DNA of 64,000 nucleotides from Epithemia pelagica (lineage: Eukaryota; Protista; Bacillariophyta): assembly GCA_946965045.2 (NCBI GenBank), contig OX337239.1:806001-870000 (forward strand), given 5' to 3'. Under the pieces are notes generated by a model, which made no database searches, was not told where the DNA came from, and saw only the letters and a program-made list of their open reading frames with translations. Of the stretch, positions 5,926 through 59,053 are shown piece by piece. Every line of letters starts with the position of its first letter. Positions within the stretch are counted from its first letter, which is position 1. Both the position numbers and the translations under genes were made by a program.

Positions 5926-7332
5926 AAGAGAACTCCCGATGGTGAGATCCTCAAACACAAAGCCAGATATTGTGTGAGAGGAGACTTACAGGAAACGGAA
6001 CAAGAAAACTACAGCCCAGTTGTTCACTGGAGCTCAATCCGTATTGTCCTCACTATCAGCTTAATCCTAGGATGGGAGCTTGCCTGCATTGATTTGAACA
6101 ATGCATTTGTACAAGCTACGTTGGATGAACCTGTATGGATTCATTTACCTAGAGGATTTAGGTCTGGTAAACCTGGAGAGACCTGCCTGCGACTCATCAA
6201 GAGTCTATATGGCCTTTCTTCAGTTCCAAGGTTATGGTATACCCACCTACTAGAGGCTTTAAAGGAAGACGGATTCACCCTTAGTGCTCATGACGAGTGT
6301 TTGCTTTACAAAGACAACATCATCATTTTTCTGTGGGTAGACGACTGTGGTGTCTGTGCTCCTAAAATGGAACTCATAGACGATCTAATCAAACGACTAC
6401 AAGAAAAAGGGTTATCTCTCAAGAAAGAAGGAAATCTAACTGACTACCTCGGAATAAACTTTATCCGTCATGAGAATAAATCTATTACCATGACCCAGAA
6501 AGGACTTATTACGAAGATTATTAAAACTACAGGACTAGAAGATTGCAACCCTAATTGGACTCCTGCAACCCAGCTGGGATTAGGCAGCGACCCAGACGGT
6601 GAACCTATGAAGGAAAGCTGGGAATATCGCTCCGTAGTAGGAATGCTCCTATACCTGGCTACCAACACTAGACCTGACATAGCTTTCGCTGTTAGTCAGG
6701 TAGCTAGATTCAGTTCAGCACCAAAGAAATCACACGCTACCGCCATCAAGACAATTGTGCGCTACTTAGTTCGCACAAGAGACAAAGGGACTATCTTCAC
6801 CCCTACTACAGATTTCAAACTAGATTGCTATGTAGATGCTGATTTTGCCGGTTTGCATGGACGCGAACCCCAAGACAATCCCGTTAGTGCTAAGTCTCGT
6901 ACTGGCTATATACTAACATTTTGTGGATGCCCACTAATATGGCGTTCGCAACTCCAATCATCGGTAGCTCTTAGTACACTCCAGGCTGAGTACCATGCCC
7001 TCTCACAAGCCATGCGTAGTGTGATAGCTACCCGCCGAGTGATTGAAGAACTTTTAGGCAATCTCAAGCTGCCGTTCCCGAAGCCCACTATTTTCTCTGA
7101 AGTCTTTGAGGACAATAGTGGAGCCTTTTACCTTGCAACGAAGCAGCGCCTAACTCCAAGGACCAAGCATTTTAACACCTACCTCCACTTCTTTTGGGAG
7201 CATGTAGGCGACCACCCCGGCGGCGTGAAAGTTAGCATGGTCAGCACAGCTGACCAAAAGGCTGATTACTTTACTAAATACCAGAATCGAGAACTTTTTG
7301 AGCGCTGCCGTAAGCTCAATCAAGGATGGTAA
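5926..7332 (+). pseudogene. RT-RNase H continuation, same frame after a premature TGA
   Basis: TGG GTA TTT AAA TGA AAG AGA ACT CCC GAT reads WVFK*KRTPDGEILKHKARYCVRGD. The conserved RT motif is split by a single in-frame stop. Confidence 0.9.
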
Positions 7333-35200: not shown

Positions 35201-36370
35201 CAACCGGGGAAGGAGTCGGTGCGACCACGGGAGCATTATAAAGAAAAGCGTCCATTTCTGGAGTATAGTCACATGGAGCAACACACATTCCAACGTTGGA
35301 TATTCCCCATTCATTGCGGCCAATCATCAAACCACCTCGAAAGATACCGCCATTTTGACCCTTATATTCCCTTTGGCCCTGCCCAGACTTGATGCTGATT
35401 AGATTAGGGAAAACCTTTGGAGATGCATCCATCAACATAATGTAGATGCCAATCACATCCCCAGAATCACCGTTCTTAAACGTAGTCTTGGAACCGTCAA
35501 TGTGAAACTTTAATTTCCCACTTCCTGCAGTCGGATGATCATAGGCGCATTCCATCATGTGGTCGTCACCGTAGAGTCCGCCGGCAATCCAACCTGCAAG
35601 TTCTGAATTCTCATCCCAGTTGATAAATTCGTCCTGATTCGTTCGACCGGTGTAGGAACAAAACACCGAACCAGCTGGGCATGCCTTTTTACCCGGACCA
35701 AACAAAGGGGAACTCGCGACATGTCCTTCATCATTTGTCTCATCCATGTAACCGGGGCATCCATCCGGAATCGGTGGCATCGTTGGTGCACTGGTAGGAT
35801 CCACGGTGGGTGCACTGGTAGGACCAGCCGTGGGGCCACTTGTCGGACCGTGAGTGGGCACATCCGTAGGACCGTGAGTGGGGCCACTTGTAGGACCGTG
35901 AGTGGGGCCACTTGTTGGACCAGAAGTGGGGCCACTCGTAGGACCTGCAGTAGGGCCACTCGAAGGACCAAAAGTGGGGCCACTCGTAGGACCAGCAGTA
36001 GGGCCACTCGTAGGACCAGCAGTTGGAGCGGACGTAGGGGCGTCGGTCGGACTGGGAGTGTGTTCCAGGGGTGTCATGTCTTCGGTAGGCTTGTTGGTCG
36101 GGGCGCTTGTTGGAATAGACGTAGGCGAGCTCGTCTTACGCTTCACGATGTAACGATGATCGTCTTCACAAATCTCGGGGGTGGCTGCATTTCAAGGACG
36201 TGTACAAGAGTTTTCAAATGGATTAGACACGAGAAAAATACATGCTACAGGCGTCTGATTCTACTGTATTGCTTACCTTGGGTAAGGGGGAAATCGTATG
36301 CTACGGCTTTCATTTGGCCCATCAACTGGGCCAAGGATGCAACCAGAAGGATTGCGCGGCCAAAGTTCAT
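32246..36370 (-). CDS. Secreted modular adhesin/mucin-like protein, 4 exons (36370-36277, 36184-34226, 34155-33971, 33898-32246), ~1296 aa
   Basis: Signal peptide MNFGRAILLVASLAQLMGQMKAVA. Three GT-AG introns (92, 70, 72 bp) give a continuous frame. PT(S/A/H)GPT repeats, choice-of-anchor-A-like motifs (VEGRAFIGG; IWNY..GITLAPTA) and beta-sandwich-like C-terminal domains. Confidence 0.8.
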
Positions 36371-37890
36371 GGTGCTTCTTCTTCTTCTTCGGCTGGACTA
36401 GTTCTTTTTCAGAAAGAGGTTTGTTTGTCTACTTCTCTTCTTCGTGCACTCTCAGAACAACGTTTGTGTTCACCTCCAAACCGTGCTCTGATCTGTGGAC
36501 CAAACGAAAAATTCTGTTCCCAATGGTAAACAGAGCGTGAGCACCGTGCTTGGTTGGACGAGTATAAAGTCCCCCGAATGACTTTCATGGAGAGAGAAGC
36601 ATCTCAATGGTTATGTGGGTTTTCCGATGCCAGTTTCAGGGCACATGAAAGGGTTCTGGAGTGAACGGTCCGCGGTCATATTCAGGTCATTGGGATCGGG
36701 AAGCGTCTTGGGATTCGTGGTTGGTCTTGACCGTCCTACGAGGACGACTATCGCGCTCTACACGATATCAGTCCCTGCCAACTTTTGATGGTTAGATATC
36801 CTCTTGCGTCCAACCCCCCACAACGACCCAACCAAGGCTTCCGCTTCGCAAATCACCCCAACTCGAGTACTCGTATTAATAATATGTCAGAGGAGTGAAG
36901 AGTGAAGGAGAGCAAAGAGAAGGCGATCGCAAGATGAGAGAAACACTAAGAACTGAAAGAGTCCATCGTGGGATCCATAATGAAAATTGCAAATTGCCCT
37001 TGGCCCATTTGAGAACTTCAGAGTCATTTATACAGTATAACGAGTTCTTATTCGTAGTTACCCAAAGGTGAAAATGACTGTGAAACCACATCCAATTGTC
37101 TCGACCGCAAAGAGCAACTCTCTATTCGTGGTTTGGTCACAACGTGTAGCTCGTGTTGGTCGATCCAACGTCGATCTTGTTGCACCCGATTGATCAAGTA
37201 GTCCGGCCTGCTTCGAGTTCGGGTATGGAGACCGAACTGAACCAAGAGCGGCCCCCCGCAGACGTAACTTACCAAGGATGATGATGATGATGATGCGTGG
37301 TGCGCATCCGCAACTGGATGCTAGTTTGTTGTCGTCGACGACAGGGTCCATTTGATTGCGTGGACCATTGGACCAGAGGATGAAACGTAATAGGATCCTC
37401 TTCGTTCGTGCTGTCACTCGTGTAGCGCTTTCCCATGCAGCTCGTCCGTGGTGCTTTGTGGTGAGTACCATGGCCGTTGGCAAAACTTCACTCTCGACTG
37501 CCGAACGAACCAACAGACGGTTGTGAGCACGTATGGCAGGGGGAACCGTGGTCGGCGGATGCCATTGTCGCTCGTCCAGTGGCGGCATCATCCGCGACGC
37601 ACACTGGCCGTGTCCTCCAATGGATCGTCCCAAGCCCAATGATGCAGTAAACTTGCATACATATAGACTAGGTAGGAGAGAGAGGTCGTTTCAGATCTTA
37701 CGTCTTTTCTAACTAGGTTGACACAATGTTAAAGTATAGGATGACTTGGGGCCGAAACAATAGAGTGGGTATGGATCAGTGATTCTGGTGCGCGTTTTCG
37801 AGTCATCATTCATTCGCTCGTCTCGGAGCACGTTGCTTGACCACACCCAAGACACCAGCCAGTCTGGAGCCCAACGATACGTTATTAGTA

Positions 37891-40800
37891 TTATGACAGG
37901 GGAGTGATTTGGAGTTCCACCAGTAGCGAGGTAAATCCAAAGGGACCGGTTCGGGTATTGGTTTTCATATCATAAAGGGGAATGGATCGATACCCCGTGC
38001 GTAACCGATTGCAGGGAATGGCCGCTTCGGCCACCCGATCATCCAAACCGACATCTTGTTCCTTGAGGGAAAATTGGATCATGGCCACTTGTGGATTCAG
38101 TACCCGCAATTCCTTGAGTTCCCGTCCCTCTTTCCAAATGGGACAAAAGCCATTGTTGTCCACGGCACGGGTACTAAACGAAGCCGTCACATAGGCCAAA
38201 CGACCGGCCGCGTCGTCCTCCTTAACGTCATGTAACGTTACGGTAACATAGGGATCAATCGTTTCTCCCACAATGGATCCACCGGGTTTGGGCAAACAAC
38301 TACCGGCCAAGACACGGATTCGGATCCGCAGGGGATCCACATGACTGGTCATGTATTTGCCGAGACTCTTCATGCGGTCCGGGATTTGCGCATCTTCTAC
38401 CGACGTGGTTGGTTCCTTGGTCTTGCTGTTGCTGTTGTTGTTGTTGTTATTGTTTGTGTGTTTGGGGTGGAGAGTGCCCCGCAAAATGGCGGCGCCGACT
38501 CCCGACAAGACGGACGCGGGTCCCATGGAGGAGGAGGGACTGTTGCTGGCAATGGGCAAAATATCGGGCGATGGTTTCAAAATGTACCCACAACGACGAT
38601 TTTCTCGAAAGCGGCCATCGTTCAAGGTCAATGGTGCGTCGGGCGTTTGAATGTTGAGGGCCACCAATTGACATCCCGCCGCCCAGGCCAAGGTGGGATT
38701 GTAATTGGAGGAATCCACTCGCAGTCCGGCGGGGTAGGTCCGGGTCAAATGACGGACATTGTAGTCTCGCCAAGCCTCCACCAGGGTTTTGCCACTGCTA
38801 CTACTGCTGCCCTTTTTCTTTTTGCCACTCAAGAGTTTGGTCACCTTCTTTTCACTCATGGAATGCATATGGGAGGTGGGTTCCGCAATGGATTGTTCAA
38901 AATTTTTGTATCGGGTGCCATGAAACAAGGTGAGACGAGCCAATTCGGGAACAATGGCCGGAACCTTGTTGTTGTTGTTGCGGGCCTTGGGCGAAGCCGT
39001 GCCCTCTTGTTTGTAGGGATCAAAATCCTTGTCGTCCTCTCTCACCCCCGTCGATATGGTTTCGGTAGTGTCTGGTTCATCCTCCTCGTCCTTGTCATCG
39101 TCTTCTGGATCCGGCGGTCGTTTTCCCTTGATGACAACCATGCCAATCAGTTCTTGTGGTGTGGGCAAGTCACCATCGCCACCGCCTTCCGTATTGGGTG
39201 GCACATAGAGCAAATCGCCCAAAATGTCATTCAAATCCCGTGCCATGGCTTGTTGAAAAAGGAGACTGCAATGATTTTCCAAGGACAGGATAATGGGATA
39301 GGTCTTGGGTTGACTGTATCGAATATAGGCCGCCACCACCCGCAAGACATCGGCAAACAAAATTTTGGAGGTCAAGGTATGACCATGAAAAATGACGGGC
39401 CAATACTGCCGCGTAGTATCCGTAGGATCGTCGCCATTTAGTTTGTTCTTCGTTTTACTGCTACTACTGCCAGTCGTCGTCGTGGCGGTGACTTCCCCAT
39501 CCCAACAATCCAATTCCAAACATTTGCATCCGCGTCTCAAGGCCGTCATGTACATTTCCACCGAACTGGACGATTGCAATTGATCGCCCGTCAAGTAGGT
39601 ATTGTGCGTCGAATTGATCCAATAGTGCGACATGGGTCGATTCATGAGCACCACTTGTGGTGGTTGGGATTGTTGTTGGGATTGTTGCTTTTTGTGTTTG
39701 GTGGCTTGCGGAATGACCAAGGTCCCATTCAAGGCCCAGGGATCGTAGGCACTGTTCATGGAATCAAACAGGTACAATTCAAAGAGGGACCGGGTCAATT
39801 CCAAGGCATTTGTCGTGCTCGTACTACTCGTACTACTATGGGCCGAGTGCTCCATGGCACTCAAGGTTTGGACCAATTCATGGGCATCCGACACGGTCAA
39901 GTGGGTCATGTCTTGAATCTGGTGCAAAAAGTCTTGCAAAAAGGTGTGACACGATACCGCGTCGGTCGTGGCGCCAAATACCACATTCCAAATCTGGTCC
40001 GCCACACAGACGGCCTTGGTGTCGTTCTTCTTGGTGGGTTTGCCCGTGGACGGGTGGTTGGTCCCTCGTTTCAATCGTTGCAACAAGTCCAACACTTGGC
40101 TGTAGGTCAAACTATCGACCTTTTGAAATTTCGTCTTTCCTTGTTGTGGTTGTTGTTGTTGGAGGAGGTGTTGCCCATAGGTTTGAAATTCGCGATGGGC
40201 CTGGGGAACATGGTAATTGATGCGTTGCAACAAGGTGGAAAATTCGGATCGGCTCAGGGTCCCATCGCGATTGCAATCCATATCGTACCAAATATAGCGC
40301 AACAACAGAGCTTCGTTACTGACGCGGACCCGTGTGGCCTGATAGGTATCTCGCACCTGTTGCAAGGCCTGGAGCAACAAGTTCCGATCGGCCTCGTCCT
40401 CCACCAAGAGATTGAGGGAAGCTTCCGACGACGACAGGGCATGATCGTCACTGCCGCCAACTCGTCGCGGACTGCCATGGAAATGATGCCACAGGGTGAC
40501 AATCTGCGACGATGCCGCCGGTCCATCGAATCGCGGATCGTCCAATCCCTTGAGACGATCGACGGTTCGAGCTCGTTCCAAGACGTGAGTGGCCACCACA
40601 CCGACTTGCCATCCATTCCAATCACAGACATCCAGGCAACGGACCGTTTTGTGGGACTGCAACAAACTGGTTTGCTGTTTGCCACCACCACCACCCAAAC
40701 AACCTCGTCTCCACCACGACCGTGGGTGCAAGTCGGCTCCGTGCGTCGACCAGACACCGCCTTGCTCCGTATTCGTAGTCGCAGCAATGGGTTGATGTGT

Positions 40801-41067
40801 GACAAAGAGGGCCAATCGATCCTTGGACAAGGTCACGTAGCGGGGTTTGAGTTGACCGCGGCTCGTGACCTTTTGGACGGGAATTCCCGGTGAGATCAAC
40901 CGGTCCAACCCCGTCAATTGTTGCAAGGCCTGCCCCAACACGGGAGGAACATGAGGAGGCCATTGTGGGGGAGAGGATGGTGTTGTCGTTGTTGTGGTGG
41001 GTGCCGCGGTAGTTGTCGTTGGACCACGGTGGGCCTTGTGGGGGGCCGTCGGCAAGGAGGACGACAT
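37891..41067 (-). CDS. PLC: Phosphoinositide phospholipase C (PH, EF-hand, X, Y, C2)
   Basis: YWINSTHNTYLTGDQL, CLELDCWDG, IFHGHTLTS, ILSLENHCS, RTYPAGLRVDSSNYNP, GCQLVALN and a C2 domain (DPYV..NNGFCPIW). Probable ATG at 41067. Confidence 0.95.
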   Translation of the reverse strand: MSSSLPTAPHKAHRGPTTTTAAPTTTTTTPSSPPQWPPHVPPVLGQALQQLTGLDRLISPGIPVQKVTSRGQLKPRYVTLSKDRLALFVTHQPIAATTNTEQGGVWSTHGADLHPRSWWRRGCLGGGGGKQQTSLLQSHKTVRCLDVCDWNGWQVGVVATHVLERARTVDRLKGLDDPRFDGPAASSQIVTLWHHFHGSPRRVGGSDDHALSSSEASLNLLVEDEADRNLLLQALQQVRDTYQATRVRVSNEALLLRYIWYDMDCNRDGTLSRSEFSTLLQRINYHVPQAHREFQTYGQHLLQQQQPQQGKTKFQKVDSLTYSQVLDLLQRLKRGTNHPSTGKPTKKNDTKAVCVADQIWNVVFGATTDAVSCHTFLQDFLHQIQDMTHLTVSDAHELVQTLSAMEHSAHSSTSSTSTTNALELTRSLFELYLFDSMNSAYDPWALNGTLVIPQATKHKKQQSQQQSQPPQVVLMNRPMSHYWINSTHNTYLTGDQLQSSSSVEMYMTALRRGCKCLELDCWDGEVTATTTTGSSSSKTKNKLNGDDPTDTTRQYWPVIFHGHTLTSKILFADVLRVVAAYIRYSQPKTYPIILSLENHCSLLFQQAMARDLNDILGDLLYVPPNTEGGGDGDLPTPQELIGMVVIKGKRPPDPEDDDKDEEDEPDTTETISTGVREDDKDFDPYKQEGTASPKARNNNNKVPAIVPELARLTLFHGTRYKNFEQSIAEPTSHMHSMSEKKVTKLLSGKKKKGSSSSSGKTLVEAWRDYNVRHLTRTYPAGLRVDSSNYNPTLAWAAGCQLVALNIQTPDAPLTLNDGRFRENRRCGYILKPSPDILPIASNSPSSSMGPASVLSGVGAAILRGTLHPKHTNNNNNNNSNSKTKEPTTSVEDAQIPDRMKSLGKYMTSHVDPLRIRIRVLAGSCLPKPGGSIVGETIDPYVTVTLHDVKEDDAAGRLAYVTASFSTRAVDNNGFCPIWKEGRELKELRVLNPQVAMIQFSLKEQDVGLDDRVAEAAIPCNRLRTGYRSIPLYDMKTNTRTGPFGFTSLLVELQITPLS

Positions 41068-41849
41068 GAGATGCGGGTGTTGCCACACACACACTACAGC
41101 GTTCACGTCGTGTGGTAACAAGACAAGGTTGTTGTAGTAGTTTGGAGGATCCGACCGCGAATCCACCAAGCAACCAAATACTTTCAGATCTCTCTCGAAA
41201 GATCTGCTTTGATTTGTCACTTCCACAAACGTTTTCTGTACAACCAAATGAATCCGGCCAAGGGCCAAACTTGTTGGTTGCTTCTTTGCTTTCCAAAAGG
41301 ACGACAGCAAGTTTGGCTGCCTCGCGTTCCAACAAAGGACGACAGTAACAACACCAACAACAGGTATCTTGGATCTTGCGGTGTGTTTACCCTGTATACC
41401 TGTACCCGAACGAGTATCTTTTTGGGTTTGTTCCTTTTTCCAAAATTTCAGAGGGCAATAGTATTGAATGGGCTAAACGGCTGAGGGCAGTAGTTGAACA
41501 CTGCTACAATGAGCCATCCTTTCCCCATTGTAGTGTAAAGCTACAAGTCACACGGAACAAAGACACGCGCTTTCACGCGGGCGCGATAGGCAGCCTCTCA
41601 ACGCTACCTATCCGCGATGGGATCCAGAAGTCGTCGACATCAGCAACCACATCACAGTTGAACCGAATCAGCCTCTCATCATGGTGTGATGGTAGGAATC
41701 TCCAATGAGTGCGGAGTGTTGACGCAGAGATTGCAGTGAGTTGCCCAAAGCAAGAACAACGATATTCTTTTGTGTGGTGGACCATTCTATTATTACTTGG
41801 AGACAAGCAACATTACAGCGTGAAACCCAACGTGCCCAAGAAAAAAATC

Positions 41850-47003: not shown

Positions 47004-49088
47004 ATGAATTACAACAATGGTCGTGGACGAGGGATTAGCAATACTCCGGCATGGATGAACAACCATCCAGGAGGACCACCTGGTGGTGGTGGTGGTCCTC
47101 GTCGAGGTGGTGGTGGTGGGAACAACTACAACCACAACGATCCGGGTCCACCTCGAGGACCGTATGGCAATCGACGAGGCGGTGGTGGTCCTCCTCGTCC
47201 AAATGACGATTGGAGAAGAGGAGGAGAGGGAGACTATCCTCCCTTTCGAGGCGGAGGTGGTTTCCGGGGTGGTGGTCGTCGACGGGGTGGTGGTCCACCG
47301 CCGCCGCATCCTCCGAATGCCCACCGTCGTCCCTCGTACGGCGATGATCGTCCTCCTCCGCTTCCACCCAAACCAGGCATGGTCACCTTTCGATCGTTGG
47401 AAGAAGAACGAGAATGGGTCGAAGATCGTCGTCGCAAACGATTGGCTCGTCCCTCCAAATTTGATATTTTGCCCACCGAGACTACCACGGGTGGTGGTAC
47501 CGCAATTCCTTCGGCCGCAGCCGCCCAAGCAGCAGCGACCGCGGCCGCAGCCGCCTTGGCCGCCACCTTGCCACCCACCCCCACGGCGGCGCACGACGGT
47601 GTTGGTGGTCCTTCCTCGTCCATAATGTCGCAACAAACACGTCATGCCCGTCGGTTGTATGTGGGCAATTTGCCCATTGGACGGACCATTCCCGAAGACT
47701 TGATGCATACGGAATTTCTCAAGGCCTTGGAACGGGCCTGGATGCCCGATGCCAATCCGACCGTATCGGTTCCACCCTCCTTGGCCGTCCAGGGGACGGT
47801 CCACGATCCCATTGTGTCGGTCTACATGAATCACGAACGTCGCTTTTGCTTTGTCGAATTCCAAACCATGGAATGGGCCACGGCCTGTATGCAATTGGAT
47901 GGTCTGCCCTTTTGTGGCGTCCCGCTCAAAATCAAACGACCCAATGAATACCATCCCTCCGCCGGCAGTGACACTAGCAATAATTTGCCTCAATTGGATG
48001 TCAGTCGGTTGGGGATTATTAGTAGCAATGTCTTGGATGGACCCAACAAGATTTTTATCGGCGGTTTGCATTATCACTTGACGGAAGCGCAAGTATTGGA
48101 ATTGATTCAAGCCTTTGGACCCATCAAGGCCTTTCATTTGGTCAAGGGAGTTGTGGGCGGCGATGGCGGGGCATCCTCGGCCAATGACCCGGGAGGAATG
48201 ATGCAATCCAAGGGCTATTGCTTTGCCGAATATGCCAATCCACAAGTCACGCTGACGGCCATTCAAGGATTGAATGGCATGGAAATTGGAGGCGGTCGGA
48301 CCTTGACGGCTCGATTGGCGGGTGAACGGGGCAGTATCGGTGGCGCGCCTCGAGTGACGGCTCCACCCCCACCCCCACCACCGCCCGTGGTCGTCGGAGC
48401 GCCGCCACCCGATCGCAACATTGTCGGTGGGTATGATATTGAAGCCTTGGTCGATGCGGCCATGGGAAAGGCCGTCATGCCCACGGCACCCGTCTATCGA
48501 GATGCCATGGGACAACCCCTCACTCGGATTGTTGTCATGAATTTACCACCCATGTTATCCGCCGCCCTAGGAGGAGGAGGAGCCGTGCCGCCAGCACCAC
48601 CACACGCATCCATGGTGGGGGCCTTGCCGCCACCACCAACACCCACCGGAATGCCAGTGGCGACACCTCCCGCCGCCAATCCGACCAACGAAGTTCCTCC
48701 ACCAACCGCAGCGTCGGTGCCAGGCTCCTCACCAGAAGCAAGTACCACGGTGGTTCCTCCCAGTCGTGTCTTGGTCTTGCACAATATGGTACAACCCCAA
48801 GATTTGGAATCCGGCACAGAATACGAATCCTTGGTGGAAGAAGTGCGGGACGAATGTACCAATTATGGAAAGTTGGAGCGCCTGGAAATTCCCCGAGCCG
48901 TCCAGCAGGACACGGGACGTCGCGAAACGATTTTGCCCAGTGCCGTGGGCAAAATTTATTTGCACTATGCCACCCTCAACCAAGCCTTGAGAGCCAAGGG
49001 AGAATTGCAGGGACGCCAATTTGGATCGGCCGTCGTACAAGTCACCTTTTATCCCGAAGATGACTTTCTACAATCCTATTTCCAGTAA
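47004..49088 (+). CDS. U2AF2: Splicing factor U2AF large subunit (U2AF65-like)
   Basis: RHARRLYVGNLP (RRM1), KIFIGGLHYHLTEAQVLELIQAFGPIKAFHLVK (RRM2), SRVLVLHNMV..VEEVRDECTNYG (UHM) and ULM-like RKRLARPSKFD. Confidence 0.9.
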   Translation: MNYNNGRGRGISNTPAWMNNHPGGPPGGGGGPRRGGGGGNNYNHNDPGPPRGPYGNRRGGGGPPRPNDDWRRGGEGDYPPFRGGGGFRGGGRRRGGGPPPPHPPNAHRRPSYGDDRPPPLPPKPGMVTFRSLEEEREWVEDRRRKRLARPSKFDILPTETTTGGGTAIPSAAAAQAAATAAAAALAATLPPTPTAAHDGVGGPSSSIMSQQTRHARRLYVGNLPIGRTIPEDLMHTEFLKALERAWMPDANPTVSVPPSLAVQGTVHDPIVSVYMNHERRFCFVEFQTMEWATACMQLDGLPFCGVPLKIKRPNEYHPSAGSDTSNNLPQLDVSRLGIISSNVLDGPNKIFIGGLHYHLTEAQVLELIQAFGPIKAFHLVKGVVGGDGGASSANDPGGMMQSKGYCFAEYANPQVTLTAIQGLNGMEIGGGRTLTARLAGERGSIGGAPRVTAPPPPPPPPVVVGAPPPDRNIVGGYDIEALVDAAMGKAVMPTAPVYRDAMGQPLTRIVVMNLPPMLSAALGGGGAVPPAPPHASMVGALPPPPTPTGMPVATPPAANPTNEVPPPTAASVPGSSPEASTTVVPPSRVLVLHNMVQPQDLESGTEYESLVEEVRDECTNYGKLERLEIPRAVQQDTGRRETILPSAVGKIYLHYATLNQALRAKGELQGRQFGSAVVQVTFYPEDDFLQSYFQ

Positions 49089-50637: not shown

Positions 50638-51621
50638 TTATCCTTCAAAATACCCATTGCGGACATTGTAGGACTTGAAGGCATCTTGCATAAAGTGTCG
50701 GCCTTCGTGGAAGAGGGAGAGACTGATAATGGCCTTGACAATGCCAATGCCTTGTCCTCGCAAAATCCCGCGCAATCCAAAGGCATGCATATCGACAAAC
50801 ATTTCCTTGACGGCTTCCGTGACGGTATAGGACTTGCCTTGAATGGAGTTGGTTTGCATAATGACTTCGAGACGACTGAGCGGATTCGTCACCACAACAT
50901 AAATGGGCGAAACGACGGCCGAAGCGACCAAACCCGTCGCCGATCGACCCAAGGACGTCTTGTCGCCCAATTCGCGTTGAATGTACTTTTGCAAACGGGG
51001 TTGACCGACGAGACCCAAGACGGCCGAGGCCAAGGAATGGCCCATGAGGGGAATGGTGCCGCGAAAGAGGGGCACAAAGCGTTGGGCGGCCGATTCCTTG
51101 ACAATCTCCCAAATGGGCTTGACGGCACCCGTTTGCTTAAAGTAGGCGCGCTGTTGCTTTTCAATCATGCGAATGGGATTGATAAAGGGGGCCGACAAAA
51201 TCGAAGCGGCCGTGGCGGCGGCAAAGCCGGGATTTTCGCCTTCGCCCAAGAAGAAGGAAAAGCCCAACAAAATGCCAAACTTTGGAATGCGCTTAAAGCC
51301 GACACCGACCAATCGAGGTCCCACACCGGACAGCGAGGCCGAGACGGGATGCGCGCGAAAGACGGCTTGGGCTTCTTGAGTGGCAATCTTGGGGTCGACG
51401 GGTTTTCCGGCGGCATCCTTGGCGTATTGTTGCACCAATTGACGATAGGCCGTAATGGGATTGTCCACAATCGTTTGAAAGGCGGAACCACCCAAATAGG
51501 CCGTCAAGGCTTGTGCTTGCGACAAACCAGACTTTTTGACCACAAAAAAGTCATCGGGGACACCCGGAATCTTGATGGACGACGTCGTCGTCGAAGGAGT
51601 CAGCGAGGAAGAAGAGGACAT
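50638..51621 (-). CDS. Divergent mitochondrial carrier (SLC25-like)
   Basis: 327 aa with three ~100-aa repeats, each a hydrophobic helix followed by a Pro motif (NPITAYRQ, NPIRMIEK, NPLSRLEV) and G..RG/PR motifs. Confidence 0.65.
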   Translation of the reverse strand: MSSSSSLTPSTTTSSIKIPGVPDDFFVVKKSGLSQAQALTAYLGGSAFQTIVDNPITAYRQLVQQYAKDAAGKPVDPKIATQEAQAVFRAHPVSASLSGVGPRLVGVGFKRIPKFGILLGFSFFLGEGENPGFAAATAASILSAPFINPIRMIEKQQRAYFKQTGAVKPIWEIVKESAAQRFVPLFRGTIPLMGHSLASAVLGLVGQPRLQKYIQRELGDKTSLGRSATGLVASAVVSPIYVVVTNPLSRLEVIMQTNSIQGKSYTVTEAVKEMFVDMHAFGLRGILRGQGIGIVKAIISLSLFHEGRHFMQDAFKSYNVRNGYFEG

Positions 51622-52693
51622 GATTCAATCCAAGACAACAATCAACAACAAGAAAAAGAACCAAGGGACTGGAGCAATCAAGCAATCAAACGTATCGTTC
51701 CAACCAAACCGAGAGACAGAGGAAAGGATGTGTATGGGCCAATCACGTCGAAATGAACCAAACCAATCCAGAAATGACCAACGACGAAAACGCCAAACAA
51801 GAATGTGAGTAGAAAGTATCACTGTCCCAACGACAATAGACGACGCTTGATTTCTCTTGACACACTTGGTTGATTGGAACTGTCAATGACCAACCACCGA
51901 TTGCATTCGATACTTCATTACACACAAGAACACAAAACGTACCACGATAGAATATAGAATACAGTAGACCACACTACTAAGTACTAGGACGAAACAGAGA
52001 AAAACAAAAAGAGACGACGACGACGACAAGAGTGCGATCAATATACGGGAAGCGTGATTTGGTGGTTTCATGACGCGTCTTGGCACCCTGTCATTTGTCA
52101 CGATCGGTGGTCTCGTCTTGTCGGCCAGCGTGCTGGACGACCAAAGACATTCTCTTTCTCTATTAGGGCCCAATGCCAGCAGATGGTCACGCCATTTCAC
52201 TATGGAGTCAAGTGTACTCGCACCGGGCCACCTAAAGTCCAGCACGCCAGCAAGCACAGCGTGCGGTTCGGCCCGAATCCTCTCCCTCCAAAATCCGAGG
52301 ACGTGGTCTCATTCGTATCGGCGACCACGAGGACGTGGTGCAACCGTCGACCCACGTGGGATTTGCTGGCAATCGTACATCATGTCGTGCGAAACCCCAA
52401 TCCATGTTCCAGATACAATGAGTCTACCTCTATTGTAATCCCGAGGAGGCCTATTCGAGTTTGGAGTCTGCTTCCTTACCGTATGGGGTTCGCTCATAGA
52501 AGTAGGTCGTTATTGCTCAGACTTTTGACACGAGGAATTACTACTACTACTTAATGGATTCAAGTGAGATATCTCAATGAATACTAGGTAGGTAGTTTGT
52601 AGCAAACCCATGCAGAGCAAACGACAAATGTTGGAGAGCAAAGAATAATCATTCTATATAGTTTCGCCATTGTAGGACATATATGCAACCGTG

Positions 52694-55600
52694 TTTCTAG
52701 ACACTTGCCACAAGAATCCTTGGTATGTGCGACGACAGTATCCAGAAAAGGGACAAGAATTCGTGGTGCTTGTGTCCACTCCGTTGGGCAGCTGCGGCTC
52801 ACGAAAGAGTGGACAGAAAACACCACGTATTCTGGTCCATCAAAGGGTAGTGTCGTTGCACCGCACACTCAAAGGATTCGGATATCACTCGTTTTTCCCG
52901 ACACTTGCCACAAGAATCCTTGGTGTGCGCGACGACAGTATCCAGAAACTGGACAAAAATACGTGGTGTTTGTGTCCACTCCGTTGGGCAGCTGCAGCTC
53001 ACGAAAGAGTGGACAGAAAACACCACGTATTCTGGTCCATCAAAGGGTAGTGTCGTTGCACCGCACACTCAAAGGATTCGGATATCACTCGTTTTTCTAG
53101 ACACTTGCCTCAAGAATCCTTGGTGTGCGCGACGACAGTATCCCGATACTGGACAAGAATGCGTGGTGCTTGTGTCCACTCCGTCGGGCAGCTGCGGCTC
53201 ACGAAAGAGTGGACAGAAAACACCACGGATTCTGGTCCATCAAAGGGTAGTGTCGTTGCACAGCACACACAAAGGATTCGGATATCACTCGTTTTTCCCG
53301 ACACTTGCCACAAGAATCCTTGGTGTGCGCGACGACAGTATCCAGAAACTGGACAAGAATACGTGGTGTTTGTGTCCACTCCGTTGGGCAGCTGCGGCTC
53401 ACGAAAGAGTGGACAGAAAAACACCACGGATTCTGGTCCATGAGAAATGGGAGTGTCGTTGCACAGCAGATTCGGATATCACTCTTGTTCCAGCCCATTG
53501 CCACAAGAATCCTTGGTATGTGCGACGACAGGATCCAGAAAAGGGACAAGAATTCGTGGTGCTTGTGTCCACTCCGTTGGGCCGCTGCGGCTCACGAAAG
53601 AGTGGACAGAAAACACCACGCATTCTGGTCCATCAAAGGGTAGTGTCGTGGCACAGCAGATTCGGATATCACTCGTTTTCCTAGACACTTGCCACAAGAA
53701 TCCTTGGTATGTGCGACGACTGTATCCAGAAAAGGGACAAGCATACGTGGTGTTTGTGTCCACTCCGTTGGGCGGCTGCGGCTCACGAAAGAGTGGACAG
53801 AAAACACCACGGATTCTGGTCCATCAAAGGGGAGTGTCGTGGCACAGCACACTCAATGGAATCGGATATCACTCGTTTTTCTAGACACTTGCCACAAGAA
53901 TCCTGGGTATGTGCGACGACAGTATCCAGAAACTGGACAAGAATACGTGGTGTTTGTGTCCACTCCGTTGGGCGGCTGCGGCTCACGAAAGAGTGGACAG
54001 AAAACACCACGGATTCTGGTCCATCAAAGGGTAGTGTCGTGGCACAGCAGATTCGGATATCACTCATTTTTCTAGACACTTGCCACAAGAATCCTTGATG
54101 CGTGCGACGACAGTATCCAGAAACTGGACAAGAATACGTGGTGTTTGTGTCCACTTCGTTGGGCATCTGCGGCTCACGAAAGAGTGGACCGAAAACACCA
54201 CGGATTCTGGTCCATGAGAAATAGGGTAGCGTCGTGGCACAGCACACACAATGGATTCGGATATCACTCTTGTTCCAGCCATCAAAGGGTAGTGTCGTTG
54301 CACAGCAGTTTCGGATGCCACTCGCTTTCCAGACACTTGCCACAAGAATCCTGGGTGTGTGTGCGACAAGAGTATCCAGAAAAGGGACAAGAATTCATGG
54401 TGCTTGTGTCCACTCCGTTGGGCGTCTGCGGCTCACGAAAGAGTGGACAGAAAAACACCACGGATTCTGGTCCATGAGAAATGGGGTAGTGTCGTTGCAC
54501 AGCAGATTCGGATATCACTCTTGTTCCAGACCCTTGCCACAAGAATCCTTGGTGTGTGCGACAACAGCATCCAGAACATGGACAAGAATACGTGGTGCTT
54601 GTTTCCACTCCGTTGGGCGGCTGCGGGGACCGAAAAACACCACGGATTCTGGTCCATCAAAGGGTAGTGTCGTTCCACAGCACACTCAAAGGGTTCGGAG
54701 CTCACTCGTTTTTCCCGACACTTGGCACAAATTCCTTGGTGTGTGCGACGACAGTATCCAGAAAGGGACAAGAATTCGTGGTGCTTGTGTCCACTCCGTT
54801 GGGCGGCTGCAGCTCACGAAAGAGTGGACAGAAAACACCACGGATTCTGGTCCATGAGAAATGGGGTAGTGTCGTTGCACAGCAGATTCGGATATCACTC
54901 TTGGTCAGCCCCTTCCCACAAGAATCCTTGGTGGGTGCGACAAGAGTATCCAGAAACTGGACAACAATTCGTGGTGCTTGTGTCCACTCCGTTGGGCTGC
55001 TGCGGCTCACGAAAGAATGGACAGAAAACACCACGGATTCTGGTCCATGAGAAATGGGGTAGTGTCGTTGCACAGCAGATTCGGATATCACTCGTTTTTC
55101 CAGACACTTGCCACAAGAATCCTTGGTATGTGGGACGACAATATCCAGAAAAGGGACAAGAATGCGTGGTGCTTGTGTCCACTCCGTTGGGCAGCTGCGG
55201 CTCACGAAAGCGTGGACAGAAAACACCACGGATTCTGGTCCATCAAAGGGTAGTGTCGTGGCACAGCAGATTCGGATGCCACTCGTTTTCCTAGACACTT
55301 GCCACAAGAATCCTTGGTATGTGCGACGACAGTATCCAGAAACTGGACAAGAATTCGTGGTGCTTGTGTCCACTCCGTTGGGCAGCTGCGGCTCACGAAA
55401 GAGTGGACAGAAAAACACCACGGATTCTGGTCCATCAAAGGGTAGTGTCGTTGCACAGCACACTCAAAGGATTCGGGTATCACTCGTTTTTCCAGACCCT
55501 TGCCACAAGAATCCTGGGTATGTGCGACGATAGTATCCAGAAAAGGGACAAGAATACGTGGTGTTTGTGTCCACTCCGTTGGGCAGCTGCGGCTCACGAA

Positions 55601-56068
55601 AGAGTGGACAGAAAACACCACGGATTCTGGTCCATCAAAAGGGTAGTGTCGTGGCACCGCAAACACCAAGGATTCGGATATCACTCGTTTTTCCCGACAC
55701 TTGCCACAAGAATCCTGGGTGTGTGCGACAACAGCATCCAGAAAATGGACAAGAATACGTGGTGCTTGTGTCCACTCCGTTGGGCAGCTGCGGCTCACGA
55801 AAGAGTGGACAGAAAACACCACGGATTCTGGTCCATCAAAAGGGTAGTGTCGTTGCACAGCACACACCAAGGGTTCGAGTATCACTCGTTTTTCCAGACC
55901 CTTGCCACAAGAATCCTTGGTGTGTGCGACGACAGTATCCAGAAAATGGACAAGAATACGTGGTGTTTGTGTCCACTCCGTTGGGCGGCTGCGGCTCACG
56001 AAAGAGTGGACAGAAAACACCACGGATTCTGGTCCATCAAAGGGTAGTGTCGTGGCACAGCACACAAG
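52694..56068. repeat. Tandem satellite, 17 copies of a ~190-201-bp quasi-palindromic (foldback) monomer
   Basis: Unit starts at ~52701, 52901, 53101, 53301, 53494, 53685, 53885, 54076, 54333, 54530, 54718, 54909, 55104, 55295, 55496, 55697 and 55898. No unique spacers. Confidence 0.95.
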
Positions 56069-56109
56069 GGGTTCTTCTTCTGTATCCTTGCCGCAATTCC
56101 TCCCGAGTG

Positions 56110-56140
<31 letters not shown>

Positions 56141-56816
56141 GGCGTCAACCAGTGTGGCGCGATCGTACTGCGGCACCGGACCATCGCTCTTTTTGGGGGG
56201 TGGACGGTCGTACCGTTCTTCCTCTTTTGGCTGTGTTGGTGAGTGAAAAACCATCATGGAGTGTCTTGCTCTACCGTTTGGAGGATGAGGGTGGTAGTAC
56301 GATTGAATCACTGACCAGAACCAACAAACAACACAAACAACGGTCCAGGAGTGCCCGCCAAATGTGCCGCCGTCCATCTCGTGGTGGTGGTGCTGCTGCT
56401 TCGGATTGTCTCGGTGACGTGCCACACGATTCTTGGGTTTCCTGTTTTTCATGGCCCTTTTGTATCGTTGTTGTTACCATGCCGAAACGACAAGGGACTA
56501 CGGACACAAGACTTGTTATTGTTGTTGTTGATGATGTGGTTGTTGCCGGTCGACAAAAAAAGATATTCTGGATCCACTACGCTTGAGCGGTTACAGCATA
56601 TAAAATGTTTATTTTTTACAAAACTTCAAGGAGATTCTTCGATGGGGGAGTGTCATTGCTTCTCTTGTTCCCCTTCTTTGTTCCTCTTGCTGACAAGGTG
56701 CGACGATTGCAACAACAACAACAGCGACGACGACGGTTCCTCTCTGCTAGAGTATCAGATTCAAAAACGTTCCAACTCTCTCTTCCTTCTCCTTCCTGTT
56801 CTCTCCTTTTTGTTGA

Positions 56817-58787
56817 ATGCCAGAATCGTCGTCCCTTTCTCGTCCCTTGTTACCAGGAGCGTCTCCCGACACCATGGCAACGAGCAGCACGACGACGACA
56901 ACGGCGTTTCCCAATGACATTGCACGTCACGTCCTCTTGCACATTCCTTCCGAATACCACCACAAAAAATCAAACCAACCATCCTTGGGCAGTTCCCTTT
57001 GTTATATCCAGTATCAGGCCGATACCGGCTTGTTGCAAGTGATTCAACATGTGCCATCCCCTCCTTCTTCCACCCGTTTGCCACCAAACGACCATGACGA
57101 CGACGAAGAATCCCTGGTCGTTTTGGATGTGTTGGATCCCGACGATCTGATTGGAGCACGACTCGTCATTGAAGAATCTCCACACACAGAGCAGGAGGAG
57201 GAGGAACACAACACTATCAATACTGCCACCAATGAACCGTCGTCGTCGGTCTTGCGCAATCGACACGGCCAAGCGACCTTGCACTTGTATTGTTATCCTC
57301 GTCGCAATCCCCAACAACAAACAACATCCTGGATGCAATGGTGTGGATTGTCGTCCCGGTCCACATCCGTGCCTGTCAATACCCCCAATCCTCATCAAAC
57401 CCACAAAGTGGTGCCCCCGACGACCGAATCACCACACTGGCCTCGCGTCGCCCACTTTCGTGCCTGGTCGGTGGCACCGGTCGAAGATTTGGGACACGTG
57501 CAAACTCTGTTGCAGGCCTTGCAAGAGGTGGCACATCCCCACCAACAAGCACACCAAACGGAACGCAACGTGTTGGTCTTGATCAATCCCGTTTCGGGTG
57601 CCAAACGCAATGCCTCCACCATTTACGAAACGTATGTCAAACCCATGGTGGGAGTTCAATCGGGGACGGTCCGTCACTTGCATGTGTGTCGGACCACTCA
57701 TGCCGGTCATGCCCAAGAACGCATGGCCGTCCGTGACACTCCCACAACGACAACAAGCGACTCGAATGACAATGATGATGATACGGATCCGGGATGGGAT
57801 ATTTCCCGGTATCAGGCCATTGTCGTAATGGGCGGTGATGGTCTCTTGTTTGAAGTTTTGAATGGTCTCGTGGCGCGTCCCGATGCGCACGACTTGCTCT
57901 TGACGAACCAGAATCATTTGACGGTCGGTGTCGTGGGGTGTGGTACTTCCAATGGCATGGCCACGAGTCTTACCCATGCCTCTCACGAACCCTACGGTCC
58001 CTTGACGGAAACCTTTTTGATTGCCAAGGGACATGAAACGCTCATGGATGTCAGTCGATATGAAACCATGACATCGACAACAACAACCACGACAACAAAA
58101 TCGTACATTTCCTTCTTGACCTATGCCTATGCCATGATTGCCGACATTGATATTGAATCCGAAGTCTTGCGATGGTTGGGAGAATTGCGCAATGATGTTT
58201 GGGCCGTCTGGCGGGTCTTGTGGTTGCGACACTATCCCGCCACGTTCCATTATCTGCCGGTCAATTCGACAAGTCGTGGTGCGGGCATGGTTCCAGTATC
58301 CAGCTTGCCACCCCTTTCGCAACCCTTGGAGAATTCTACGACGGACCAGGACAAGGACGGTCCGGAATGGGTCACGATTCAGGGTGACTTTTATCTCTTG
58401 TGGGTATCGCATGTCTCTCATGCCGCCATGCACACCCATCAAGCTCCCGGTCAATCGCTCAATCAAGGAGCCTTTCAAGTCATGATGGTGCGCAAACAAG
58501 GCGGCACGGCCATTTCCAAATGGCGCATGGCGTGGATTTTGTTGGGCTTGGAAACAGGTCGTCATGTAGATATGAGCCCCTGGGTGGAACTGGTCCAGTG
58601 TACGGCCCTGCGATTGGAACCCTTGGGCGGACAACGACGAGTGGGTCGCAATGTCGTGGATGGAGAATTGGTCGAACCCGGTCCCATTCAAGGAGTGGTC
58701 GTCCCGGGATTGATCCATGTCTATGCCGGTCCAGCGGCCAGTGTCCAGGCACCCCTTCGGACTCGCACCGTTCCAACGGTACTATAG
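56817..58787 (+). CDS. Sphingosine/ceramide kinase-like (DAGK catalytic domain)
   Basis: LINPVSG, TTHAGHA, GGDGLLFEVLNG, GCGTSNGMA, DIDIESEVLRWLGELR and VDGE motifs. Confidence 0.88.
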   Translation: MPESSSLSRPLLPGASPDTMATSSTTTTTAFPNDIARHVLLHIPSEYHHKKSNQPSLGSSLCYIQYQADTGLLQVIQHVPSPPSSTRLPPNDHDDDEESLVVLDVLDPDDLIGARLVIEESPHTEQEEEEHNTINTATNEPSSSVLRNRHGQATLHLYCYPRRNPQQQTTSWMQWCGLSSRSTSVPVNTPNPHQTHKVVPPTTESPHWPRVAHFRAWSVAPVEDLGHVQTLLQALQEVAHPHQQAHQTERNVLVLINPVSGAKRNASTIYETYVKPMVGVQSGTVRHLHVCRTTHAGHAQERMAVRDTPTTTTSDSNDNDDDTDPGWDISRYQAIVVMGGDGLLFEVLNGLVARPDAHDLLLTNQNHLTVGVVGCGTSNGMATSLTHASHEPYGPLTETFLIAKGHETLMDVSRYETMTSTTTTTTTKSYISFLTYAYAMIADIDIESEVLRWLGELRNDVWAVWRVLWLRHYPATFHYLPVNSTSRGAGMVPVSSLPPLSQPLENSTTDQDKDGPEWVTIQGDFYLLWVSHVSHAAMHTHQAPGQSLNQGAFQVMMVRKQGGTAISKWRMAWILLGLETGRHVDMSPWVELVQCTALRLEPLGGQRRVGRNVVDGELVEPGPIQGVVVPGLIHVYAGPAASVQAPLRTRTVPTVL

Positions 58788-58924: not shown

Positions 58925-59053
<129 letters not shown>

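What the first reader, a model, noticed from the sequence alone, without database searches (positions are those of the whole stretch)
52694..56068. Tandem array of 17 long foldback hairpins (~200-bp palindromic satellite)
Seen: each monomer is nearly a full palindrome. In copy 2, left arm 52914-52981 (GAATCCTTGGTGTGCGCGACGACAGTATCCAGAAACTGGACAAAAATACGTGGTGTTTGTGTCCACTC) aligns with the reverse complement of right arm 53007-53079 (GAATCCTTTGAGTGTGCGGTGCAACGACACTACCCTTTGATGGACCAGAATACGTGGTGTTTTCTGTCCACTC). The inner ~31 bp are close to perfect. The central segment also pairs (CGTTGGGC/GCTCACG), leaving a ~7-nt loop. Hairpins are joined by ~35-nt linkers and the period is nucleosome-sized. Inference: a polycistronic hairpin-RNA/small-RNA precursor cluster, a cruciform-forming chromatin or centromere-like element, or a tandemly amplified foldback/MITE. 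No listed feature explains it, and the many ORFs called over it are repeat artefacts.
Basis: partly seen in the sequence, partly recalled or inferred. Interest (0 to 1): 0.8.

Follow-up and report, generated by a model that had tools for sequence, protein, structure and literature searches.

The report
Kelch-gene-derived tandem hairpin array, diatom
A diatom chromosome carries 17 head-to-tail copies of a 200-base unit made from the tail end of a Kelch gene folded back on itself, so any transcript would form a string of hairpins able to yield small RNAs against a Kelch gene family of several hundred members, but nothing yet shows that it is transcribed or used.

Summary
Window 52690-56068 holds 17 tandem units of about 200 bp, and every unit folds into a 60-70-pair imperfect hairpin on either strand (z -2.4 to -11.3).

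New here: the unit is not anonymous satellite or a MITE. It is a fold-back copy of the last ~100 nt of a stand-alone Kelch propeller gene. A sense arm is followed by an apex and antisense arm that are the reverse complement of the gene end. About 80 bp of Kelch downstream flank lies just upstream of the array. Both arms share derived changes, so there was one fold-back event, then tandem amplification.

The genome is Epithemia pelagica UHM3201 (identical assembly size). The array is unique in it and lies about 2.2 Mb from the nearest Kelch genes found on that scaffold.

The conserved inner stem covers the MDKNTWCF-coding stretch. Its 22-mer matches 41 places perfectly and about 300 with two or fewer mismatches. 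Argonaute-like, Dicer-like and RdRP genes are present.

Evidence of selection is weak: paired columns vary about 3-fold less than unpaired ones, but there are no compensatory changes.

Best reading (about 0.5): a hairpin-RNA-like small-RNA source aimed at its parent family. Nearly as likely: an inert by-product. The scan noted other Kelch-derived hairpins elsewhere in this genome.

The parts
52609..52689 (-). About 80 bp derived from the region downstream of a Kelch gene stop codon, in antisense orientation, directly abutting the array
   Evidence: 81% identity to C6:316247-316323 and 94% over 33 nt to L028. In both, the stretch lies 85-150 nt beyond a Kelch 3' end in the orientation that fits the antisense arm. 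The rest of both flanks is unique in the genome.
52690..56068 (.). Array of 17 fold-back units. Unit starts: 52690, 52890, 53090, 53290, 53483, 53674, 53874, 54065, 54322, 54519, 54707, 54898, 55093, 55284, 55485, 55686, 55887
   Evidence: Every unit folds significantly better than shuffles. Full-length units occur nowhere else in the 60.5-Mb genome.
52890..52913 (+). Unit 2, unpaired leader (24 nt). Origin is uncertain: its first part resembles the Kelch downstream region and the rest possibly upstream Kelch codons
   Evidence: Unpaired in the fold. Weak similarity only. Most variable part of the unit (pi 0.137).
52914..52981 (+). Unit 2, sense arm: a copy of Kelch codons around ...NPSCATLPLMDKNTWCFRRL, ending at GTCCACTC
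   Evidence: Aligns in sense with 37 Kelch 3' ends. Its core 22-mer has 41 perfect matches outside the array.
52982..53006 (-). Unit 2, apex: a 7-bp mini-stem with a 7-nt loop. It is the reverse complement of the last Kelch codons (...CEQQPNG), so it belongs to the antisense copy
   Evidence: for the fold. for the homology.
53007..53089 (-). Unit 2, antisense arm (53007-53079) plus 10-nt tail. Together they are the reverse complement of Kelch codons from IGGY to CFRRL
   Evidence: About 80% identity over 76-81 nt to many Kelch genes on the opposite strand.
54265..54321 (+). Extra 57-bp partial copy of an antisense arm at the end of unit 8
   Evidence: Alignment of the units.
54519..54706 (+). 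Unit 10, with a 12-nt deletion that removes half of the apical mini-stem. It still folds (z -3.4)
55887..56068 (+). Unit 17, truncated in the outer antisense arm. It is followed by unique sequence and a (TC)13 run at 56110-56136
   Evidence: The same array-to-flank junction is present in the other haplotype (P0022).

Best explanation
Shown: a fragment with the last ~100 nt of a stand-alone Kelch propeller gene plus part of its downstream flank landed between two unrelated, divergently oriented genes on scaffold C13 of Epithemia pelagica. One fold-back (snap-back) duplication placed a sense copy of about 70 nt next to the antisense original. The gene's own short terminal stem-loop forms the apex. 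The resulting 200-bp unit was then amplified by unequal exchange to 17 tandem units.

Inferred: if a transcript runs through the array in either direction, each unit folds into an imperfect hairpin of 60-70 pairs. The genome's Dicer-like enzyme would cut this into small RNAs, and an Argonaute would carry them. The best-conserved part of the stem encodes the family's invariant MDKNTWCF stretch. Such guides would therefore pair with the 3' coding end of a large share of the several-hundred-member Kelch family. That is a hairpin-RNA (hpRNA) or proto-miRNA cluster aimed at its parent family.

My odds: origin as described about 0.9; the array yields small RNAs about 0.5-0.6; those RNAs have a selected regulatory effect on Kelch genes about 0.3. 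The confidence given for this entry (0.5) is for the reading that the array works as a hairpin small-RNA source.
For: Structure.

Kelch origin of both arms, the apex and the left flank.

Single fold-back: both arms share a 3-nt insertion and a G-to-C change that are absent from, or rare in, 37 family 3' ends. The inverted core motif pair with a 0-60 nt spacer occurs only in this array.

Target potential: the sense-arm 22-mer has 324 genomic matches at two or fewer mismatches (control 0), 41 of them perfect and outside the array. Among 37 sampled genes, 9 share a perfect 21-mer and 22 share one with a single mismatch.

Machinery: a Piwi-domain gene, a 1455-aa frame with two RNase III domains, and at least four RdRP loci.

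Constraint-like pattern: the inner arms and apex have pi 0.04-0.06, against 0.09-0.14 for the outer arms and linker. Columns paired in single-unit folds have pi 0.042, against 0.137-0.148 for unpaired columns, p about 1e-3 to 1e-4. Arm positions that are complementary by homology have pi 0.067, against 0.176 for mismatched ones.

The array is kept on both haplotypes.

Precedents: tandem hpRNA clusters derived from their target genes in Drosophila (PMC10317233); inverted repeats as the most potent small-RNA sources per Mb in Phytophthora, another stramenopile (PMC3804510); inverted-repeat constructs silence genes in a diatom (PMC2724275).
Against: No expression or small-RNA data could be consulted.

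None of the 55 consensus pairs shows a compensatory change, and the covariation term is unfavourable at +1.47.

The paired/unpaired contrast is partly circular. The units are not independent. The contrast shrinks to about 2-fold if columns with mixed pairing are counted as paired. Higher mutability of unpaired bases, or repair centred on the apex, could also produce it.

The antisense arm has no perfect target outside the array. Two mismatches to the family consensus are present in 14 of 17 units, so a plus-strand transcript would give only imperfect guides.

Arm mismatches show no G-U excess on either strand: 1 G-U against 2 A-C.

Some units are damaged (units 8, 10, 17).

Sharing of variant bases with the family is weak: left arm 14 of 24 against 8.3 expected, right arm 4 of 16 against 5.3 expected. 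It is also confounded by ancestral states.

Other Kelch-derived hairpins in this genome were judged to be drifting by earlier follow-ups in this scan.
Confidence: 0.5

Rival explanations
1. Inert by-product. The array is a satellite born from a Kelch pseudogene fragment through a replication template switch and unequal crossing-over. It is untranscribed, or transcribed without consequence, and is slowly decaying.
For: No compensatory changes. Arms are already 16-28% diverged. Indel-bearing and truncated units are present. Unit order differs between the two haplotypes, as expected for a neutral array under unequal exchange. The family has hundreds of copies and many broken ones, so stray fragments are expected. 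Earlier follow-ups on other Kelch hairpins in this genome reached this reading.
Against: Variation is 2-4-fold lower at paired than at unpaired positions and lowest in the inner stem. All 17 units keep a significant fold. The array is a unique event that grew to 3.4 kb in a gene-dense region and is kept on both haplotypes. In RNAi-competent stramenopiles, inverted repeats are strong small-RNA sources (PMC3804510).
Confidence: 0.38
2. DNA-level structural element: a cruciform-forming or centromere-like satellite acting in chromatin.
For: Period of about 200 bp. Inverted-repeat units can in principle extrude as cruciforms. The DNA-level fold is implied by the same complementarity.
Against: The unit occurs at one locus only, so it is not a satellite shared between chromosomes. 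GC of 0.50-0.51 equals the surroundings, whereas the diatom centromeres described so far are low-GC (own knowledge, not checked here). Arms that are 72-84% complementary with many bulges disfavour extrusion. The period is explained by the size of the two gene fragments.
Confidence: 0.04
3. Amplified MITE or foldback transposon.
For: Palindromic unit of MITE-like size.
Against: No solo or dispersed copies and no terminal repeats with target-site duplications. Both arms, the apex and the left flank are Kelch-derived.
Confidence: 0.02
4. Repetitive protein-coding gene (ORFs up to 342 aa run over the array).
For: Long ORFs. Two of them sit in a public protein collection as predicted proteins (P0019, P0021).
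Against: The 200-bp period is not a multiple of 3. Unit lengths (188-201, and 257) shift the frame. ORFs are open on both strands. None of the four array-derived ORF products carries a precomputed Pfam domain, and the only relatives are the array itself and its allele.
Confidence: 0.01

Closest known systems
Drosophila tandem hpRNA clusters (hp-CG4068; D. simulans hp-tHMG-cluster)
   Same: Head-to-tail hairpin units in similar numbers: 20, 9, 14 and 10 copies of hp-CG4068 across species, and 13 units in hp-tHMG-cluster. In hp-tHMG-cluster the units derive from the gene family they target. Copy number changes fast (PMC10317233). Here there are 17 units, Kelch-derived, with a different arrangement on the two haplotypes.
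   Different: For the fly loci a common primary transcript, Dcr-2-dependent siRNAs and target de-repression are demonstrated. None of this is known here. This locus is in a diatom, aims at a family of hundreds of genes rather than one or a few, and its stems are more mismatched.
Plant miRNAs born by inverted duplication of their targets, especially miR482/2118-type miRNAs against NBS-LRR genes
   Same: Highly duplicated, diversifying gene families repeatedly spawn hairpins by inverted duplication. Those hairpins aim at the coding sequence of a conserved protein motif, so one small RNA covers many members (PMC5026261; Allen et al. 2004 as cited there). Here the conserved inner stem covers the invariant MDKNTWCF-coding stretch of a large Kelch family that earlier notes of this scan describe as hypervariable elsewhere.
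   Different: No mature small RNA, processing precision or target cleavage is known. The locus is a tandem 17-unit array rather than single MIR genes. The Kelch family's role is unknown. Canonical miRNAs were not detected in the one diatom examined closely (PMC4247016).
Phytophthora inverted-repeat small-RNA loci
   Same: Stramenopile lineage. Hairpins from inverted repeats give about 21-nt small RNAs with variable precision. In the same species several expanded gene families (Crinkler effectors, type III fibronectins) are also sources of 21-nt small RNAs (PMC3804510).
   Different: Those loci are defined by sequenced small RNAs. This one is defined by sequence alone. A tandem array of this form was not reported there.
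Ordinary gene-fragment-derived satellite DNA
   Same: Tandem amplification, unit variants in mosaic order, indels, allelic rearrangement.
   Different: Each unit is an internal fold-back of a coding fragment. Variation also avoids paired positions.

Membership tests
hpRNA / endo-siRNA hairpin locus | Transcript-scale inverted repeat that folds into a long intramolecular hairpin | tested here: met
   All 17 units fold with z -3.1 to -11.3 (+) and -2.4 to -8.8 (-). The fold is predicted only.
hpRNA / endo-siRNA hairpin locus | Arms homologous to a protein-coding target gene (origin by inverted duplication) | tested here: met
   Sense and antisense arms align to Kelch 3' coding ends at about 80%. 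The core 22-mer is identical to 41 family sites.
hpRNA / endo-siRNA hairpin locus | Dicer-dependent small RNAs of about 21 nt mapping to the stems | not testable with these tools
   No small-RNA data were reachable.
hpRNA / endo-siRNA hairpin locus | Primary transcript spanning the hairpins | not testable with these tools
   No RNA-seq was reachable. The array lies between divergently oriented genes (50638-51621 on the minus strand, 56817-58787 on the plus strand).
hpRNA / endo-siRNA hairpin locus | Host encodes Dicer, Argonaute (and RdRP) | tested here: met
   Piwi domain 99 bits; two RNase III domains in one 1455-aa frame; RdRP up to 464 bits.
Canonical miRNA gene or cluster | Stem maintained by selection (compensatory changes, conservation across species) | tested here: inconclusive
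   0 of 55 pairs are compensatory, but paired columns are less variable. No other species' sequence could be fetched.
Canonical miRNA gene or cluster | Match to a described miRNA or other RNA family | tested here: not met
   Rfam gave no hit at gathering score over the window and none at E of 1 or less over the array.
MITE / foldback transposon | Dispersed copies with terminal inverted repeats and target-site duplications | tested here: not met
   Full units occur only in this array. The flanks are Kelch-derived on the left and unique on the right.
Centromeric or structural satellite | Satellite shared among chromosomes, or distinctive (low-GC) composition, and CENH3 binding | tested here: not met
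   Single locus. GC 0.50-0.51, like its neighbours. CENH3 binding is not testable.
Protein-coding tandem repeat | Reading frame preserved across units | tested here: not met
   Unit lengths of 188-201 bp (and 257) are not in register. ORFs lie on both strands.

The most novel reading that the evidence does not exclude
The array is a working 'master' small-RNA locus. Its 17 hairpins supply guides against the one invariant coding stretch (MDKNTWCF) near the 3' end of a hypervariable Kelch propeller family of several hundred members, and so set the dosage or expression of a candidate recognition repertoire. It would be convergent with plant miR482/2118 control of NLR genes and with fly hpRNA clusters. 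It would also be the first hairpin-RNA gene cluster described in a diatom.
Probability: 0.25. Interest if true: 0.8.

Novelty: new member of a known kind. Interest (0 to 1): 0.55.

Why it matters
Diatoms have RNAi genes and can be silenced with inverted-repeat constructs. Natural hairpin small-RNA genes with identifiable targets have not been described in them, and canonical miRNAs were not found in Phaeodactylum (PMC4247016, PMC2724275).

This locus offers a defined, unique, easily assayed candidate. The parent family is known, the predicted target site is known, and two different alleles exist in a cultured, sequenced strain.

If it makes small RNAs, it links RNAi to control of a huge, fast-evolving Kelch family. 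It would then be a third independent instance of the rule that expanding gene families spawn their own hairpin regulators. If it does not, it is a clean example of how a fold-back duplication plus unequal exchange turns a coding fragment into a satellite.

Tried and rejected
- **Two-paralogue origin.** I asked whether the arms came from tail-to-tail genes. Rejected: both arms share derived characters.
- **Recurrent fold-back hot spot at this motif.** Rejected: the inverted core pair with a 0-60 nt spacer exists only here.
- **Strand asymmetry.** A G-U excess would have pointed to the transcribed strand. None was found. The uniformly lower energy of the plus strand comes from shifted, non-homologous pairs.
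- **Tracking of family alleles by the units** (gene conversion or co-evolution). Only a weak excess in the left arm, and none in the right arm.
- **Orthologous or related arrays.**
  - Two metagenome scans with hairpin-specific junction patterns found nothing.
  - The protein search with an array ORF found only the array itself and its copy on a 513,873-bp contig, most likely the deposited alternate haplotype.
- **A larger sample of Kelch 3' ends.** Family statistics therefore rest on 37 sequences plus genome-wide pattern counts.
- **Rfam.** No match.
- **Remains of a Kelch gene body next to the array.** None found.
Full report
**Observation**

Tandem Repeats Finder reports one array at window 52690-56065 with period 200 and 16.9 copies. 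Anchoring on a conserved 12-mer splits it into 17 units of 182-257 bp, most of them 191-201 bp. The units are on average 91% identical (83-97%).

Unit 2 (52890-53089) folds as RNA at -93.6 kcal/mol on the plus strand (z -8.2) and -87.0 on the minus strand (z -7.2).

All 17 units fold better than dinucleotide shuffles: z -3.1 to -11.3 on plus, -2.4 to -8.8 on minus. The inner 22 nt of the arms are 91% complementary. Whole arms are 72-78% complementary in single units and 84% in the consensus.

The array is 3.4 kb in a HiFi assembly and is also present on a second contig (see below), so it is not an assembly artefact.

**What the unit is made of**

A search of the window's own genome with one unit finds full-length copies only in this array. 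Positions 86-166 (apex plus right arm) also hit dispersed loci at about 80% identity.

At those loci the match lies at the very end of ORFs of 368-440 aa. These are stand-alone Kelch propellers (Pfam Kelch_1, E 6.5e-38).

The family is very large. All 112 scored candidates are strong matches, and the first look found 946 candidates, mostly in clusters near scaffold ends.

I aligned the units with 37 family 3' ends. The result is:
- The right arm, the apex and the 10-nt tail are together the reverse complement of about 110 nt of the gene, from the codons for IGGY to QQPNG.
- The left arm is a sense copy of about 70 nt (codons around NPSCATLPLMDKNTWCFRRL) that stops at GTCCACTC.
- The apex is therefore part of the antisense copy, and it forms a small stem-loop on its own.
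- The 80 bp just upstream of the array (52609-52689) match the region 85-150 nt downstream of Kelch stop codons, in the orientation that goes with the antisense arm.
- Everything else in both flanks is unique. No other Kelch coding remains lie in the window.

**One event, then amplification**

Both arms share a 3-nt insertion and the change GTCGACTC to GTCCACTC relative to the family. They therefore descend from one fragment, not from two paralogues.

The inverted pair of core motifs with a spacer of 0-60 nt occurs only in this array (13 exact hits) and nowhere else in 60.5 Mb. This is a unique event, not a hot spot.

The simplest history has three steps:
1. A Kelch 3' fragment with some downstream flank was inserted here, about 2.2 Mb from the nearest Kelch genes found on this scaffold.
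2. A snap-back or template-switch duplication occurred, centred on the gene's own terminal mini-hairpin.
3. Unequal exchange amplified the 200-bp unit.

The mosaic order of unit variants supports step 3. These variants include a 9-nt deletion, a GAGAAAT insertion, a 57-bp partial duplication in unit 8 and a 12-nt apex deletion in unit 10.

**Organism and allele**

The assembly has 60,520,547 bases. That is exactly the size stated for Epithemia pelagica UHM3201, uoEpiScrs1.2, whose second-haplotype contigs were also deposited (PMC11167328). A neighbouring carrier protein is 94% identical to an E. clementina protein.

A protein search with an ORF that runs from the last units into the right flank found two ORF products, P0020 and P0022. 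They lie on a 513,873-bp contig whose length matches the one carrying the counterparts of two neighbouring genes on the left:
- RRM protein: 95% identical between the two contigs.
- Carrier: 99% identical.

P0022 keeps the same array-to-flank junction. Its terminal units, however, resemble window units 6-7 (94%) rather than 16-17.

This contig is most likely the other haplotype. The array is thus allelic, retained on both haplotypes, and rearranged between them.

**Is there a sign of selection?**

RNAalifold on the 17 units gives a 55-pair consensus hairpin with no compensatory pair and an unfavourable covariation term. With young, related copies this test has little power, but it gives no support.

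Variation is uneven along the unit:

| Comparison | Lower-diversity class (pi) | Higher-diversity class (pi) |
|---|---|---|
| Region | inner arms and apex, 0.04-0.06 | outer arms, leader, tail, 0.09-0.14 |
| Single-unit folds | columns paired in at least 70% of units, 0.042 | columns unpaired in at least 70%, 0.137-0.148 (p about 1e-3 to 1e-4) |
| Arm homology | complementary positions, 0.067 | mismatched positions, 0.176 |

The single-unit contrast also holds within the inner region.

There are caveats. The units share ancestry. Columns with mixed pairing were set aside, and counting them as paired leaves about a 2-fold contrast. Unpaired bases may simply mutate more, or repair may homogenise the centre.

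Arm mismatches show no G-U excess on either strand, so there is no hint of the transcribed strand.

Several unit variants (AATTCG, AATGCG, AAGCAT, TCATGG) are also alleles in the family. The excess over chance is weak: 14 of 24 against 8.3 expected in the left arm, and none in the right arm. It is also confounded by ancestral states.

**What it could do**

The conserved inner stem is the coding stretch for MDKNTWCF, the most invariant part of the gene's end.

- *Sense-arm 22-mer.* It has 324 genomic matches at two or fewer mismatches (reversed control 0). Of these, 41 are perfect and outside the array.
- *Antisense-arm 22-mer.* It has no perfect match outside the array, one at one mismatch, and about 85 at two.
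- *Sample of 37 genes.* Left arms of five units share a perfect 21-mer with 9 genes and a one-mismatch 21-mer with 22 genes. Right arms reach one mismatch for 16 genes only in units 1-2.

A minus-strand transcript would therefore give perfectly antisense guides. A plus-strand transcript would give miRNA-like, mismatched ones.

The genome encodes a Piwi-domain protein, a protein with two RNase III domains, and several RdRPs.

The array sits in a 5.2-kb gap between divergently oriented genes: a mitochondrial-carrier-like gene on the minus strand and a diacylglycerol-kinase-like gene on the plus strand.

**Comparison with known systems**

The closest anatomies are the fly tandem hpRNA clusters. 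hp-CG4068 has 20, 9, 14 and 10 units in four species, and hp-tHMG-cluster has 13 units derived from an amplified gene family (PMC10317233).

The closest logic is the repeated birth, by inverted duplication, of plant miRNAs that aim at the conserved P-loop-coding motif of highly duplicated NBS-LRR genes (PMC5026261).

Within stramenopiles, Phytophthora inverted repeats are the strongest small-RNA sources per Mb (PMC3804510). Inverted-repeat constructs silence genes in Phaeodactylum (PMC2724275), where no canonical miRNAs were found (PMC4247016).

No paper in the library pairs Epithemia with Kelch.

Membership in the hpRNA class is not established. The structural and origin criteria are met. The defining molecular ones (transcript, Dicer-dependent small RNAs, target effect) could not be tested.

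**Rivals**

- *Inert satellite.* Nearly as likely as the hairpin-RNA reading.
- *MITE.* Excluded by the lack of dispersed copies and by the gene origin.
- *Centromere or cruciform element.* No support: single locus, average GC, imperfect arms.
- *Protein-coding repeat.* Excluded by frame-breaking unit lengths.

**Relation to earlier notes of this scan**

Other Kelch-derived hairpins were noted on other pieces of this genome, and follow-ups judged them to drift like junk. The Kelch family itself was described there as huge and hypervariable.

I confirmed here the family's size and the Kelch origin of this array. I did not test hypervariability. This array differs from those notes in three ways: it is tandem (17 units), it lies far from the Kelch clusters, and its variation avoids paired positions.

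**Verdict**

This is a real and well-explained structure of known kind: a fold-back of a gene fragment, tandemly amplified. It has a concrete, testable and so far unproven role as a hairpin small-RNA source against its parent family.

Noticed in passing
window 49-7332: Long ORFs (1958 aa and 452 aa, plus strand) with GAG-pre-integrase, Pol beta-barrel and retroviral SH3-like domains: a Copia-type retrotransposon at the start of the window.
   Followed up: partly
window 35789-36038: 24-bp tandem repeat (about 10 copies, 81% matches) lying inside overlapping long ORFs on both strands (34134-36146 minus, 35721-36401 plus). It may be a coding 8-residue repeat.
   Followed up: no
window 58927-59052 and 56110-56136: A perfect (TG)63 microsatellite just after the diacylglycerol-kinase-like ORF, and a (TC)13 run 40 bp after the array. 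The (TC) stretch is replaced by other sequence in the allelic ORF product P0022.
   Followed up: partly
L061:1365-1520 (G000:C6:316,365-316,520): A solitary Kelch 3'-end fragment with its downstream flank lies just beyond an intact Kelch gene. It has the same flank motif as the one abutting the array, which shows that such 3' fragments are copied around.
   Followed up: partly
window 52923-53681 and 55558-56586: Two artefactual ORFs over the array (P0021, P0019) are present in a public protein collection as predicted proteins without domains. The allelic ORFs P0020 and P0022 are there as well.
   Followed up: yes
window 47004-49088 versus P0003: The two haplotypes differ by 5% at the protein level, with many small indels, in a low-complexity RRM protein next to the array. 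They differ by only 0.6% in the neighbouring carrier. Allelic divergence is therefore high and uneven.
   Followed up: partly
window 37891-41310 (-) and 56817-58787 (+): A phosphoinositide phospholipase C (X, Y and C2 domains) and a diacylglycerol-kinase-like gene lie within 20 kb of each other. Both are lipid-signalling genes.
   Followed up: no
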